64,000 nucleotides of DNA from Asterias rubens (Eukaryota), in assembly GCF_902459465.1 (NCBI RefSeq), contig NC_047069.1, positions 4,650,001 through 4,714,000 of the forward strand, in the 5' to 3' direction. Below, piece after piece: positions 54,301 through 59,466 of this stretch. The stretch's first letter is position 1. Each line of letters starts with the position of its first letter. The position numbers and the translations under genes are program-made. The notes below the pieces were generated by a model. That model was not told the DNA's origin. It searched no databases and saw nothing but the letters and a program-made list of their open reading frames with translations.

Positions 54301-56381
54301 TTTTGTAAAGAAAAAAACTAATATACACTTTGAGACAAGTAATTGTTTTTGTAACATTTAGTCTCACCAAACAGTTATCAATGGTAACTATTTGAAAGAC
54401 AATACATTGAAAAGCAATACAGTTCTCAAGAACAAAATCTACCTGGGAAGTAGACACACAAGTGTTGTTACCACAAACTAGATAGAAAATCAATTGTTAA
54501 CAACAACAACTGTTTAAAAGTTCTTTCACAGCACCTAAACAAACAAAAATTGCTATTGTTATCACCTCATCTTTGTGCAAGGCAACATCTCACTACACTT
54601 TTGACTATGAATCTTCTGAACCATTTTCCTGATGAACATGAGATTTTAGCCAAGAAAAAGTTGCAGTGTTGTTTCTCACCACACGTCCAACCAAATTAGC
54701 TTGTGAAATAAACTATATTTCTTAATATTTCTTCTTTCACTGATCACAGAGAAATGCTACTTACTTTTACCATCATCTGAGAAGGCCACACCCCTACAGG
54801 CTTTCTGATGAGCTGGCAAGGACATAATCTCTTCACTTGGCATTTCTGGTGAAAAAGAATACCTAAGCAAAAAAAGGGAGAAATTAAAACATATACATAT
54901 TTAATACCAGATCTTTTCTGAAGAGGATTGTGTATACTTCCTGTTAATGCATTGCAAGTAAAGTAATACACTATATTGCAAGACAACTGATATCAAGATT
55001 TATTTACATACTTAGAGTCATTAGTTTATTAGAAGCACAACTTCAAATTCAGCAAATAGATAAAATTAAAAAAAATACCAACATCATTCATAATACAAAA
55101 CTTTTGCTAAATGTACTCGAAGGGGGCCTATCATTATCAACAATGTGAACATTAGCATAATGTAAAGGGTCTTACAGTTTAACAGTGCCATCCATCATAG
55201 CTCCAGCCAGGATGTTATCACTTGGATGACAACATAATCTGGATATCATATCATCACACAAAATGGTCTTGGGTTTGGGTGCCTGTTCAAAAAATATATA
55301 AAAATATAAAAACAACAGTTAAAGATGGTTGCTAGCCTCGTCCCCACCAACAGTCCCTGACCAGAGTCAGGGGGGAAATACTATAATCATCACAAATAAT
55401 ATGAATAAAATAAATCAAATGAGCGGCTGCAACTTGGATTGGAAGATGATTCATGATTCCTTTTCCATGCAATTTCCTGGCTTCCTCTTCACAAAAACAA
55501 ACAACACACCACACTCAATTTTTTTTTATTTATTGTTGTTTTGGCGTAAACAAGCTGCCCGCGCAAGCTTTCGCGCAAGCTTGAAGCTTACACGCATAAT
55601 CTTCAGTTCAAGTTTGCACGCTCAGCGAGGCGGAGGCTGAAGTTTGCGCGCGAGGATAGAAGTAAGTGCCAACATTACATACATTGTCATCTTTGTTTGT
55701 TAAAATGTATTTATATTTGTACCCCTGTACTGCGCCTAAGGTGGTGCAATATTTTGCCTTTTAAAGGCAGTGGACACTATTGGTAATTACTCAAAATAAT
55801 TATCATCATAAAACCTTTCTTGATTACGAGTAATGGGCAGAGGTTGATAGGATAACACATTGTGAGAAGTGGCTCCCTCTGAAGTGGAGTAGTTTTCGAG
55901 AAAGAAGTAATTTTCCACTAATTTGATTTCGAGACCTCAAGTTTAGAATTTGAGGTCTCGAAATCAAGCATCTGAAAGCACACAACTTCGTGTGACAAGG
56001 GTGTTTTTTCTTTCATAGTTATCTCGCAACTTCAACGACCAATCAAGCTCAAATTTTTACAGGTTTGTTATTTTATGCATATGTTGAGATACAGCAAGTG
56101 AGAAGACTGGTCTTTGACAATTACCAATAGTGTCCAGTGTCTTTAAAGTTTAATATTTTATAAAAATGAATTGAATTTGAATGATTATGAATGAAAATTC
56201 TCACCTCCGATTCGTCATCGTCTTCTTCTTCATCTTCACTATTCCCCTCTTCCTCACTTTCACTTTCCGATTCTGCTTCTTCTTCTTCAGAATTATTGCT
56301 GGCTTCATCTGAATCAGAGACAGAATCATCTTTAGCACAGTCCTCAAGGTTGCTCACGTTTTCCGACATGGTGGCCGCCAT
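51321..56381 (-). CDS. WDR55: WD repeat-containing protein 55, 391 aa; exons 56381-56205, 55282-55176, 54862-54765, 54265-54105, 53235-53129, 52775-52676, 52163-51994, 51576-51321
   Basis: WD40 blades with WDR55-type motifs HQKACRGVAFSDDGK, ATADDDGQFKVWDLRK, EDYISEM, TSGDGTMSSFNIRRRK, FGDLSDRFPGH, LISCSHDQKIKFW and a C-terminal FFSGL; acidic N-terminus. All 8 exons are in phase (1176 nt). The second ATG (56369) has a gccaccATG context. Confidence 0.93.
55761..56146 (+). mobile_element. Full-length ~378-bp TTAA-flanked MITE (Kolobok-like) in WDR55 intron 1
   Basis: ttaa|aggcagtggacactattggtaatt...aattaccaatagtgtccagtgtct|ttaa; AG..CT termini with TTAA TSD; about 11 related copies in the window. 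Confidence 0.85.
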
Positions 56382-56890
56382 CTTTACAATTTCACCCAAT
56401 TACAAATAATAACCCGAATACGAATAATAACTTCCCCCAAAAGGGGGCGCTGTTTTGGGGACCGTTAATTAAACTAAACAATTTCTACCAAAGAGAGCGC
56501 TATTTTGGGGGACCGTTAAATAAAGAAAGAAAAGGGCCGGCGATTTCTTCCCTAAAAACATAGACTTGTGGACAAGTCGTTAAATCGGCCCCACGCGCTG
56601 AGATAGTGCTCCCCCGACAACGCTGCTCTCGCGCGAACTCACTGCTCTCGCGCGAACTGATGGCTCCCCGATTTCGACTCCTCATAATGAGGAGTCGAAA
56701 TCGGGGAGCCATCAGTTCGCGCGAGAGCAGTGAGTTCGCGCGAGAGCAGCGTTGTCGGGGGAGCACTATCTCAGCGCGTGGGGCCGATTTAACGACTTGT
56801 CCACAAGTCTACTAAAAACACGGCACACTGCACTGCCGGTCAGACTCGACGTGACACTGAAGTGCCAACCTACTTCACCGGGACCGTAAG
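56382..56890. promoter_or_regulatory. WDR55 promoter region, possibly bidirectional
   Basis: CpG-rich region just upstream of the WDR55 ATG; duplicated motif at 56438-56473 and 56488-56524; plus-strand donor-like ggacc|gtaag at 56885. Confidence 0.55.
56561..56811. mobile_element. Perfectly palindromic non-autonomous DNA transposon (foldback MITE), AcademH-like or MULE-like
   Basis: 125-bp arms that are exact reverse complements around one central A (56686); TAGAC...GTCTA termini; exact 9-bp direct repeat ctaaaaaca at 56552-56560 and 56812-56820. Confidence 0.9.
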
Positions 56891-59466
56891 ACGCTTACTC
56901 AATTGTAGTTATTGTGATATTGTATTATTTTGTTTAATATAATATTCTCAACATTCATTACAGTCAAACGAGCAGAGAGAAGACAATAAAGAACATTTAC
57001 TTTAGTTTTTTTGTATAGATGTGGGCGACATGAGCGAGGAAAACCCGAGAGAATTATTCCAGGCCAGGGGGAAAACCCACGATTTCATTGTTATTGTTTA
57101 TTATTTATGATGAGCATTCGCACTGACGGTGACACTCCCACAGCATTATGCAGTAAATCCAGTCATTTTCCTAGTTCTTGTCTGGACTTGGATGACTTTC
57201 CTACCCCTTTACTGGGTGTCTCAATAATGAGATATCCCTTTATATGAAAAATAGTGAAAAAGTGGTGGCAGGATACGGAAAGATATCCAATAAAAACAAC
57301 AATCCATAATTGGTATTATTTATTGATGTTCGTTCCTTTAATTCTACGCTGCAATAATCGTTCTGAATCTTCGTTCTGAATCTCACGGGTTCTTCATTGC
57401 AGTCAGGAGGATTGAGGGTTAATAATCACAACTTACTACCACCCATCTACCAGTGCCACCATCACTGAAGAAAAAGTTTAGTTGTAAGTAACTGTGTAGG
57501 TTGGTGGTAAGTGCTGAGTTGATTGAAAGACCATCCGCCAAAAGCTGGTGCCGAGTCTACAAGGTTACACTCGGGTTTCCACAGCTGACTTTGTGGGTGC
57601 CAAGTTTCTTGGTGCCAAAGTGATTGGCTCCCATTGCATTACACATTTTTAGTTGTAGTTTTAATAACCTATCGATCCTTTGTTTTCTCTCAAAGTCTTG
57701 AGGCAATTTGTAGGTCGGAGGACAGAGAAGACGCAAAGCTACAAGAAGCCCAGGCTAAGACAATGCATGACCTCAACAAGAACCCTGAACCAAGAGGTCG
57801 GCCTCCTAGGATTCTTTACATCCCATTCTCTGTAGCAATCATCTTCACGTTGAGCACCATGGCAGCGGGATTTCTGCTTTGTGTTACCTCGGCCCTGATC
57901 TTCAATAAGAAGAAGAGTGTCGAGACTCATTGTGGAGTACATGTAAGCTGTTTATTGTCACTTTATTTTGTGCTGAGGTCTGGAGGCTGTTTTCTAACTG
58001 GTTATTTTACAGTAGAATAATTGAAACTAAGAAAATATTAATGATGACTTCTATAGCGCTGGCATCCACAAAAGTGGTGCCAGCTTCAATAATAAAGGTC
58101 ATAGCAAAAAACAGGTCAGAAGATGGCCTGCTCAGGGCTTGAGTTTAGGTGAAATTCTACAAGACCGTAGAGCTTGTACCTCAGACAGATTTACTGAATC
58201 AAAGGAGCAGAATCTGGGAAATATTTATCCACACAGTTTTTCATTCATGTATTCAATTGCCTTTTTTTATTTGGACAAGTATGAGGTTCAGCCAGATTCA
58301 GATTATCAAACAGCATGCCACATTGTTGACTGATTGGACCAAGTAAAAAAATGTAACAAATGTGTTTAACTACAACCGTCAGCGTGACAGACGAAATCTC
58401 AAAAACTGAATCTACTTTAAATGCTAGTCTTGACAAAGAGCTTCCATTAAAAAATTTCAAATATATTTTCTTTTACTTAAACACCATCATTCAGCGTAGC
58501 CTGATCGTGTCTGTGGCCACCTCCTCTTCAGATTGTAATGGGGAGAGGTATTCCTGGGGTCACTGCCATCATCTGTTCTCTTTTCAGTCACTGCGGCGCT
58601 ATTCTGAGCTCTTGCACACTTCTTTTACTCCACTTTAAACTATATTTTATTTCCAAACAACATTACCAATGTTTTAAACTTAATCTTGTTGTATCCAAGG
58701 TGCCCAACTTTCTTCCTTCAATCAGTGCAGCCATAGCTCTTCCTCCATCCTCGTACATCTGGAAGCTGTCAATCATCTTAACATCAGTCCAGAGATTGGT
58801 TGCCGTCAAGTTTCACCATATGCAGTTTAGTTCCATTAGGACAAGGTGTGTAATGAGGGACTGGAATTTCACCATCAAGAGGCCAAGGCCTTTTTAATTT
58901 TTTTAAATGGCCTTCCGTTAGAATCCTTGCAAACAGCGCCCTTACTGAGGCAAAAGGAGGCAGATCATTGGACTTAAGCTGTGAATATTACAGTCCTGAG
59001 TGACACAATTGGTTTACCGAACATGTAGTCCTGGCTATTTTTGTAGTAGTCATGGCCTGGCAGCTCGATTAACTGAGTAATTGAAAAACGGTAGTCGCGA
59101 CTCGATTAAGCAATCAGTCGTGACTACGGCACTAGTCACTTAGCACTAATGCAAACTGTTTTCTTTGCTAAATTCTTCCAGACCCCGGGAATGATATTTA
59201 GGAAATGTCTGGACAAGGTTGAAAAGAAAAAACTGCTCTTATAAATATTAGCTCAATTTCTTTAGGCTAAAGGAATGAAAACTTACAGTAAATTGGCATA
59301 CATTTGATTGGTTAACGACTCACAACTCAGTTAGGAAGCTTTACAGTTGATCCTGTATACTGTGAGAAGTTTGACTTTGGAGTCATCACTTCAATTTGGT
59401 TTAATGCATGTTTGTGTTAAAATTGCATAAATTTTGAGCTGTTTCTTACCAAGAAAGTGTGCAGAC

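What the first reader, a model, noticed from the sequence alone, without database searches (positions are those of the whole stretch)
56552..56820. Perfect 251-bp palindrome with exact 9-bp TSD in the WDR55 promoter (young foldback element, AcademH-like)
Seen: 125-bp arms are 100% reverse-complementary with a 1-nt spacer; termini TAGAC/GTCTA; exact flanking direct repeat ctaaaaaca (56552-56560 and 56812-56820). Each arm has a 19-bp-period repeat ctgctctcgcgcgaact, giving four ttcgcgcg (E2F-like) words; CpGs are intact; it lies 180 bp upstream of the WDR55 ATG. Established: 9-bp TSDs are made by MULEs and by the helicase-encoding AcademH lineage, and TAG..CTA ends fit Academ. Spacer-less palindromes of this length extrude cruciforms, are recombinogenic, and give perfect dsRNA hairpins if transcribed. 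Inference: a very recent, probably polymorphic insertion consisting only of two fused transposon ends. It may rewire or destabilise the promoter of a ribosome-biogenesis gene and could be a source of endo-siRNA. The TSD argues against an assembly fold-back artefact.
Basis: partly seen in the sequence, partly recalled or inferred. Interest (0 to 1): 0.75.

Follow-up and report, generated by a model that had tools for sequence, protein, structure and literature searches.

The report
Ends-only AcademH transposon stub upstream of WDR55
The perfect 251-base palindrome is real: it is the two fused ends of a very young sea-star cut-and-paste transposon of the helicase-encoding AcademH type, one of about 200 such ends-only copies in this genome, so the element is ordinary although its family breaks in an unusually regular way.

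Summary
There are 125-nt arms that are 100% complementary, one central base, TAGAC/GTCTA termini and an exact 9-bp duplication (CTAAAAACA). The element lies 190 bp upstream of the start codon of a WDR55 orthologue.

The arm is the terminal inverted repeat (TIR) of a family with about 484 termini (about 240 elements) in this 417.6-Mb genome. Exact 9-bp duplications flank 39 of 47 checked copies. The family has three forms:
- one 12.4-kb copy with two convergent genes, a DEAD/Helicase_C helicase and a DUF6589 protein whose model looks like DDE transposases;
- about 33 non-coding elements, mostly about 4.1 kb;
- about 200 ends-only or truncated copies.

The perfect symmetry looks like chance. In 25 ends-only copies all 50 breakpoints fall at TIR positions 106-131, the two sides vary independently, and nearly every junction is unique. 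The window's junction is 125+126 nt with 1-nt microhomology and occurs once in the genome. The hotspot abuts an inner inverted copy of the terminal motif.

Most likely a long element here lost its interior through a break or aborted repair at that inner site, followed by end joining. Polymorphism, cruciform, siRNA and E2F effects remain untested.

The parts
56552..56560 (.). Left copy of the 9-bp target-site duplication (CTAAAAACA)
   Evidence: D16. The family makes 9-bp TSDs: 39 of 47 copies exact and 4 more with one mismatch.
56561..56685 (+). Left arm, equal to TIR positions 1-125 of the family. It is identical 125/125 to ends of a 4.2-kb copy (C4:12991002) and a 4.16-kb copy (C3:16681479).
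56686..56686 (.). Junction base. It reads as TIR position 126 of the right arm (125 + 126 nt), or as a 1-nt microhomology (125 and 127 overlapping by one). This junction is unique in the genome.
56687..56811 (-). Right arm, equal to TIR positions 1-125 in reverse complement
56812..56820 (.). Right copy of the 9-bp target-site duplication
56564..56583 (+). Outer terminal motif (TIR 4-23; core ACTTGT-GG-ACAAGT plus CGTTAA), mirrored at 56789-56808. It is the presumed transposase-binding site. Long elements carry an inverted near-copy at TIR 125-142, which this copy has lost.
   Evidence: 18/20 match with a 2-nt gap; score 32 against a background maximum of 28
56623..56660 (+). Two 19-bp subterminal repeat units (each holding CTCGCGCGAAC), mirrored at 56712-56749. 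They are the source of the four TTCGCGCG words.
   Evidence: (D1, D8). Present in every sf1 TIR compared; subfamily sf2 arms are one 19-nt unit shorter.
56549..56549 (.). Third base left of the TSD (T). With G56823, the third base right of the TSD, it fits the family's symmetric target preference Y-N2-[N9]-N2-R.
   Evidence: C 32/43 and T 10/43 on the left; G 32/43 and A 11/43 on the right
56204..56370 (-). First coding exon of the WDR55 orthologue (ATG at 56368-56370), 190 bp from the palindrome
   Evidence: ORF; a 1902-nt contig of run X4 aligns only to 56204-56366, as a spliced transcript would; WDR55 identity from downstream exons

Best explanation
The palindrome is an ends-only (TIR-only) internal-deletion derivative of a very young AcademH-type cut-and-paste DNA transposon family of this sea star. 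The family's transposase made a 9-bp staggered cut at a Y-N2-[N9]-N2-R target 190 bp upstream of the WDR55 start codon. That step is shown by the TSD and by the family-wide target pattern. What remains is TIR 1-125 joined to TIR 1-126 of the other end. Inferred: a long element (4.1-4.2 kb non-coding, or the 12.4-kb coding form) sat here, or at a previous site. It lost everything between two breakpoints that each fell in the family's breakpoint hotspot, TIR positions 106-131. This zone lies against the inner, inverted copy of the terminal motif (TIR 125-142). The two stubs were then joined by end joining with 1-nt microhomology. Two sub-mechanisms fit about equally. (a) After excision, repair synthesis copying the element from a sister or homologue stops at the inner site on both sides, because of bound transposase or because the new strand folds back on its own terminal motif, and the two short strands are then joined. 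(b) The transposase aberrantly cuts at the inner sites. In both cases the near-perfect symmetry is a by-product of two independent breaks in the same 25-nt zone. The 19-bp CGCGCG-containing repeats are subterminal repeats of the TIR, probably transposase-binding sites, and need not be host regulatory sites.
For: Family and mobility. The arm matches at 98-100% at many loci. There are 240+244 outer termini against 0 for the reversed control. The 9-bp TSDs are exact in 39 of 47 copies, and the target signal outside the TSD is symmetric.

Superfamily. The 12,388-bp copy at C15:14040377-14052764 has the same 152-bp TIR and an exact TSD, GTAAATCAG. It carries helicase exons (DEAD, Helicase_C 1.5e-16, a RecQ_Zn_bind hint) and DUF6589 exons (4.7e-21, 2e-7) on opposite strands. 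The same gene pair is linked convergently at four loci, with 39-66% identity among the other three. A DUF6589 model (pLDDT 85.9) has as best structural neighbours the P-element transposase (Z 7.3, 247 residues), Hermes (Z 5.2) and retroviral integrase cores. AcademH is reported to make 9-10-bp TSDs and to encode a helicase (PMC10045372; PMC10799480).

Deletion origin. Only 65-66 ends keep TIR 118-149 or 128-149. By contrast 402 keep 85-108, 148 keep 109-130 and 484 keep 1-28. All 50 breakpoints of 25 short copies lie at 106-131, with 0-4 nt microhomology or 1-19 nt filler. The two sides are not correlated (p = 0.26). The window junction is unique. The TTAA-centred junction recurs at 4 loci in both arm subfamilies. 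Other derivatives break at the same place: 127/127 with 296 bp of foreign DNA, 1227/127, and 122/~6 flanked by a TSD.

Structure. TIR 4-30 pairs with 108-113 and 126-142 in single-stranded DNA (dG -31.9, z -3.8).

Reality of the insertion. Contigs of run X1 cross both junctions (56125-56585 and 56788-57300).
Against: No read spans the whole palindrome, because only short-read contigs could be laid and they break in the repeat. Assignment to the Academ clade itself rests on architecture and fold; no Academ reference protein was available for comparison, and the structural Z-scores are moderate (below 8). Sub-mechanism (b) predicts excised inner elements, yet at most one inner-only end exists. 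Sub-mechanism (a) needs a very strong block to explain so sharp a boundary. Whether the deletion happened at this locus, or the stub arrived already short, cannot be told from one genome.
Confidence: 0.85

Rival explanations
1. The 251-bp stub was made elsewhere and jumped here as a ready-made miniature element (MITE) mobilised in trans. It was not formed by collapse of a long element at this locus.
For: It keeps both outer termini, both terminal motifs and the subterminal repeats, so it should be a substrate. The TSD is intact. Two short copies at different loci, L028 and L051, share a junction.
Against: This junction occurs once in the genome. Nearly every short copy has its own junction. 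The one shared junction is expected by chance, at about 1.7 coincidences given the breakpoint spectrum (my calculation). Cut-and-paste movement without copying would, however, leave no sibling, so this rival is not excluded.
Confidence: 0.35
2. It is a Mutator-like (MULE) or Drosophila-type Foldback element, the other known makers of 9-bp duplications.
For: The 9-bp TSD, long TIRs with internal tandem subrepeats, and heterogeneous foldback copies. One copy has 100-bp tandem repeats in its arm (C7:3846908-3847361).
Against: Only three PF10551 hits exist in the genome (C15:2.41 Mb, C15:12.29 Mb, C5:16.41 Mb); none was seen near a listed family terminus, though the termini list was incomplete. 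The only coding element with these TIRs encodes a helicase and a DUF6589 protein and shows no MULE domain.
Confidence: 0.04
3. It is an assembly fold-back artefact and not real DNA.
For: Perfect palindromes can arise from chimeric long reads, and no single read spanning it was seen.
Against: An exact TSD is present. Independent short-read contigs join each flank to the TIR. About 200 similar copies exist, each with its own TSD and junction. The site fits the family's target motif.
Confidence: 0.02
4. The insert has been taken up as a working part of the WDR55 promoter (E2F-like sites) or as a hairpin source of small RNAs.
For: It lies 190 bp upstream of the ATG. It carries four TTCGCGCG words and 28 unmethylated-looking CpGs. 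If transcribed it would form a perfect hairpin.
Against: The same words are in every sf1 TIR compared, so they are explained by the transposon. The insert is identical to other copies, so it has had no time for selection. No RNA contig covered it specifically.
Confidence: 0.08

Closest known systems
AcademH lineage of the Academ DNA transposon superfamily (Kojima 2020, as cited in PMC10045372 and PMC10799480)
   Same: TIRs; 9-bp (reported 9-10 bp) target duplications; a coding copy with a DEAD/Helicase_C helicase gene plus a separate transposase gene; found in animals.
   Different: No Academ reference protein could be compared here, so clade membership is inferred. The inner inverted terminal motif, the breakpoint hotspot and the Y-N2-[N9]-N2-R target preference are not features I know to be described for AcademH.
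Internally deleted non-autonomous elements and MITEs formed by abortive gap repair (Rubin and Levy 1997, cited in PMC4877112; P, Ac/Ds and Mu deletion derivatives, from my own knowledge)
   Same: Derivatives keep both ends and the TSD. Junctions show microhomology or filler DNA. Short copies outnumber long ones.
   Different: Classic cases have breakpoints scattered along the element. Here about half of all ends, and all 50 sampled ends, break within 25 nt.
Bari-derived MITEs and IR-DR type Tc1-like elements such as Bari3 and Sleeping Beauty
   Same: Long TIRs with an outer and an inner copy of the binding motif. [quoted passage not shown]
   Different: A different superfamily (TA target, Tc1/mariner). 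There the inner repeat is direct, whereas here the better match is inverted.
Drosophila Foldback (FB) elements
   Same: Palindromic, heterogeneous, mostly non-coding copies with subrepeats in the arms and 9-bp duplications (my own knowledge).
   Different: FB arms are long arrays of short tandem repeats and the element is grouped with MULEs. Here the arms are unique TIR sequence with only two 19-bp units, and the coding partner is helicase plus DUF6589.

Membership tests
AcademH (Academ superfamily) | Target-site duplication of 9 or 10 bp | tested here: met
   The 9-bp TSD is exact in 39 of 47 copies and has one mismatch in 4 more. It is present in the window copy and the coding copy. The criterion is taken from PMC10045372.
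AcademH (Academ superfamily) | Terminal inverted repeats | tested here: met
   152-bp TIRs, perfect in L031, with 2 mismatches in the first 150 nt of the coding copy.
AcademH (Academ superfamily) | The autonomous copy encodes a superfamily-2 helicase (DEAD / Helicase_C) | tested here: met
   DEAD in two exons (1.3e-5, 4.6e-6) and Helicase_C (1.5e-16) plus a RecQ_Zn_bind hint on the + strand of the C15 element.
AcademH (Academ superfamily) | The autonomous copy encodes an Academ-clade DDE transposase | tested here: inconclusive
   The second gene carries DUF6589. It is linked to the helicase gene at 4 loci. The model's best structural neighbours are DDE transposases and integrases (P element Z 7.3, Hermes 5.2, integrases 4.3-5.2), while Foldseek found nothing. 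No Academ reference sequence was available for a tree.
MULE / Foldback | MULE-type DDE transposase (PF10551) associated with the TIRs | tested here: not met
   Three PF10551 hits in the whole genome, none seen at a listed family terminus (the termini list was incomplete), and no MULE domain in the coding copy.
MULE / Foldback | TSD of 8-11 bp and long TIRs | tested here: met
   These features are shared with AcademH, so they do not discriminate.
MITE (amplified miniature element) | Many near-identical copies descended from one short master, with a shared internal sequence or junction | tested here: not met
   Junctions are nearly all different. The window junction is unique. The arm haplotypes of short copies mirror those of different long copies.
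MITE (amplified miniature element) | Short, non-coding, with TIRs and a TSD, derived from a DNA transposon | tested here: met

The most novel reading that the evidence does not exclude
The family's TIR carries a second, inner copy of the terminal motif that dictates where the element breaks. Each excision or aberrant cut then leaves a roughly 230-260-bp palindromic 'stub' at the old site. On this reading the ~200 ends-only palindromes are oversized footprints that record former positions of about 33 long elements, and they are not an amplified MITE family. This would be a built-in, site-specified self-truncation mechanism in a superfamily whose transposition chemistry has not been studied.
Probability: 0.3. 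Interest if true: 0.6.

Novelty: new member of a known kind. Interest (0 to 1): 0.4.

Why it matters
The single palindrome is an ordinary transposon remnant, and nothing shown here says it alters WDR55. The family behind it is more useful. It appears to be a very young, possibly still active AcademH family with one coding copy, about 33 long non-coding copies and about 200 stubs, all 98-100% alike. It has a clear symmetric target motif and an unusually sharp deletion hotspot. AcademH is among the least studied eukaryotic transposon groups, so such a family offers concrete substrates (outer site, inner site, 19-bp repeats) for a first biochemical study. It also shows that hundreds of perfect or near-perfect palindromes of about 250 bp are tolerated in an animal genome, which bears on how unstable such sequences are in vivo.

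Tried and rejected
(1) A search for a transposase inside the 4.1-kb copies found no ORF over 134 aa and no Pfam hit.

(2) Large inserts in long copies were taken as candidate coding regions. All proved to be nested retroelements: Gypsy-like in C111, BEL/Pao in C8:2.45 Mb, Penelope-like in C21:5.42 Mb and a DIRS-like element in C21:5.55 Mb.

(4) A test for an excess of symmetric junctions, which a hairpin or fold-back origin would predict, found none: 8 observed against 6.3 expected, p = 0.26.

(5) The idea that the deletion arose by recombination between the 12-bp palindromic cores of the two inner sites was rejected, because the predicted 272-bp junction is absent from the genome.

(6) The idea that inner sites define an independently jumping inner element was not supported: at most one inner-only end exists.

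(7) No empty-site allele is present in the assembly.

(8) The Kojima 2020 paper is not held, so AcademH criteria were taken from papers that cite it.

(9) The protein-atlas look-up of a WDR55 exon gave only generic WD40.

The 20 further solo termini and the other three helicase/DUF6589 loci were therefore not read.

Full report
**Observation.** Arms 56561-56685 and 56687-56811 are 125 nt long and 100% complementary, with one base between them. The termini are TAGAC/GTCTA, and the 9-mer CTAAAAACA flanks the element on both sides. Each arm has two 19-bp units, which give four TTCGCGCG words. The insert is GC-rich (58%) with 28 CpGs and CpG o/e 1.32. The flanks have 39% GC and o/e 0.62. The minus-strand ATG at 56368-56370 is 190 bp away. 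Exons further down give human WDR55 chains as their best or colinear PDB matches, so the gene name is right.

**It is a transposon end, and the family is large and young.**
- The 125-nt arm matches many loci of the window's own 417.6-Mb assembly at 98-100%.
- A 28-nt terminal pattern occurs 240 times forward and 244 times reverse; the reversed control gives 0. That is about 240 elements.
- Of 47 copies read, 39 have exact 9-bp duplications and 4 more have one mismatch.
- Outside the duplication there is a symmetric target signal. The third base to the left is C in 32 of 43 sites and T in 10. The third base to the right is G in 32 and A in 11. The window site fits with T56549 and G56823.
- The window arm is identical over 125/125 nt to ends of a 4.2-kb copy and a 4.16-kb copy.

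**Which superfamily.** The common long form (about 4.1 kb, perfect 152-bp TIRs) has no coding capacity. Several large inserts in such copies are nested retroelements. A pattern for the inner part of the TIR finds only 66 ends. Among them is one pair 12.1 kb apart on C15.

That element is 12,388 bp long. It has the same TIR, an exact TSD (GTAAATCAG) and subterminal similarity to the 4.1-kb form. It carries two convergent multi-exon genes:
- a helicase, with DEAD, Helicase_C at 1.5e-16 and a RecQ zinc-binding hint;
- a protein with DUF6589 (4.7e-21) and zinc-finger hints.

The same two genes are linked in the same convergent layout at four loci of the genome, with 39-66% identity among the other three, so they travel together as a mobile unit.

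DUF6589 has more than 2000 relatives. Full-length ones are 820-1130 aa, with the domain in the C-terminal half. An AlphaFold model of that half (pLDDT 85.9) found nothing with Foldseek. An exhaustive structural alignment ranked the P-element transposase first (Z 7.3, 247 residues). Next came Hermes (Z 5.2) and a run of retroviral integrase catalytic cores (Z 4.3-5.2), all spanning model residues 62-436. The Z-scores are moderate, but the theme is consistent with an RNase H-like DDE core carrying a large insertion.

AcademH is reported to make 9-10-bp duplications and to encode a DEAD/Helicase_C helicase beside its transposase (PMC10045372; PMC10799480). The MULE domain PF10551 has only three hits in the genome, none seen near a listed family terminus, though the termini list was incomplete. 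The caveat is that no Academ reference protein was available for a tree.

**What the palindrome is within the family.** About 85% of copies lack the inner TIR. The counts of ends that keep each TIR segment are:

| TIR segment kept | Ends |
|---|---|
| 1-28 | 484 |
| 85-108 | 402 |
| 109-130 | 148 |
| 118-149 / 128-149 | 65-66 |

I read 30 short copies of 144-259 bp. All are the two ends fused. They fall into two arm subfamilies, and both subfamilies also exist as long elements.

In the 25 copies that could be mapped, all 50 breakpoints lie at TIR positions 106-131 (median 120). Junctions show 0-4 nt of microhomology or 1-19 nt of filler, some of it copied from the arm. The two sides are no more symmetric than shuffled pairs: 8 pairs within 2 nt against 6.3 expected, p = 0.26.

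The window copy is simply the case x = 125, y = 126, or 125 and 127 overlapping by one base. Its junction occurs once in the genome. A different, TTAA-centred perfect junction recurs at four loci and in both arm subfamilies, so such junctions form repeatedly. One pair of short copies shares a junction, but that is within chance expectation.

Other derivatives break at the same spot:
- 127/127 with 296 bp of foreign DNA between the stubs;
- 1227/127;
- TIR 1-126, 1-127 or 1-133 joined to unrelated DNA;
- 122 nt of one end joined to about 6 nt of the other, still flanked by its TSD.

**Why there.** Long TIRs carry at positions 125-142 an inverted near-copy of the terminal motif at 4-23: 18 of 20 bases with a 2-nt gap, scoring above every other window of the element. 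As a single strand the TIR folds so that 4-30 pairs with 108-113 and 126-142 (dG -31.9 kcal/mol, z -3.8). The hotspot is therefore the stretch just outside, and running a few bases into, this inner site.

Two readings fit.
- Repair synthesis after excision, copying the element from the outer end inwards, stops at the inner site. The block could be bound transposase or fold-back of the new strand. The two short strands are then joined by end joining. This is abortive gap repair with a fixed stop (concept: Rubin and Levy 1997, cited in PMC4877112).
- The transposase occasionally cuts at the inner sites.

Against the second reading, excised inner elements are not found elsewhere: at most one inner-only end exists. 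Against the first, the boundary is very sharp. A third idea, recombination between the palindromic cores of the two inner sites, predicts a junction that is absent. On either surviving reading the long element is not needed at the site any more. The stubs would then mark former positions of long elements, which would explain about 200 unique junctions against about 33 long copies. This last step is inference.

**Reality and polymorphism.** Contigs from the run that holds 96% of the stretch's words cross both insertion junctions (56125-56585 and 56788-57300) and show no branch at the TSD. The insert is therefore real in that sample and shows no sign of an empty allele there. Contigs break inside the repeat, so none spans both arms. 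A contig from a run under another organism label aligns from exactly 56812, with 63 unaligned letters before it. The assembly holds no empty-site sequence. TIR words are abundant in all four runs laid, so the family is present under all four organism labels.

**Function.** Nothing tested here shows an effect on WDR55. The CGCGCG-containing units belong to every sf1 TIR compared (subfamily sf2 has one unit fewer). The hairpin energy is what any perfect palindrome gives. The genome tolerates some 200 such palindromes, several perfect to within 0-3 central bases. E2F binding, cruciform extrusion and small-RNA production remain open.

**Verdict.** The element itself is an ordinary ends-only remnant, a new member of a known kind. 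The family-level regularities (inner site, hotspot, target motif, single coding copy) are the part worth following up.

Noticed in passing
own genome, 43 insertion sites (loci L001-L074, L079/L080): The family has a symmetric target preference outside its 9-bp duplication. The third base to the left is C (32/43) or T (10/43), and the fourth is never C. The third base to the right is G (32/43) or A (11/43), and the fourth is never G.
   Followed up: partly
G000:C7:3846908-3847361; also C23:3033944-3034171: Some copies have the inner half of one arm repeated in tandem (four units of 100 bp), like the satellite-built arms of Drosophila Foldback elements.
   Followed up: no
G000:C4:12064828, 12068054, 12071318 and C7:942366, 944851, 947338: TIR fragments recur at regular spacings of about 3.2 kb and 2.49 kb on one strand. 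A stub seems to be embedded in a tandemly repeated larger unit.
   Followed up: no
L071/L072 (C111), L077 (C8:2452900-2461400), L078 (C21:5424000-5433900), L076 (C21:5555400-5564700): Long copies of the family are hosts to nested retroelements. These are a Gypsy-like element (RVT_1, RNase H, integrase), a BEL/Pao element (Peptidase_A17, DUF1759), a Penelope-like element (RT plus GIY-YIG) and a probable DIRS-like element.
   Followed up: partly
window 56425-56524: Two copies of a roughly 50-bp unit lie between the WDR55 start codon and the palindrome (repeat finder D3/D6). Read depth there is 5-9 times that of the flanks, so it belongs to another repeat family.
   Followed up: no
window 56100-56148: Summed contig depth is extremely high in all four runs (millions against about 160), with many loose ends. 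A very high-copy short repeat lies just downstream of WDR55 exon 1.
   Followed up: no
window 56838-56885: Run X4, which behaves like RNA, covers about 56838-56878, and a GTAAG follows at 56886. This may be a first exon of a divergent plus-strand gene. If so, the palindrome sits inside a compact bidirectional promoter.
   Followed up: no
G000:C10:4632152-4637319; C8:2479422-2483267; C15:14143050-14148381: Three further loci carry a helicase gene and a DUF6589 gene in the same convergent layout, at 39-66% identity. These are other AcademH-like families, and the C8 and C15 ones are decayed with stop codons.
   Followed up: no
It is not related to the family studied here.
   Followed up: partly
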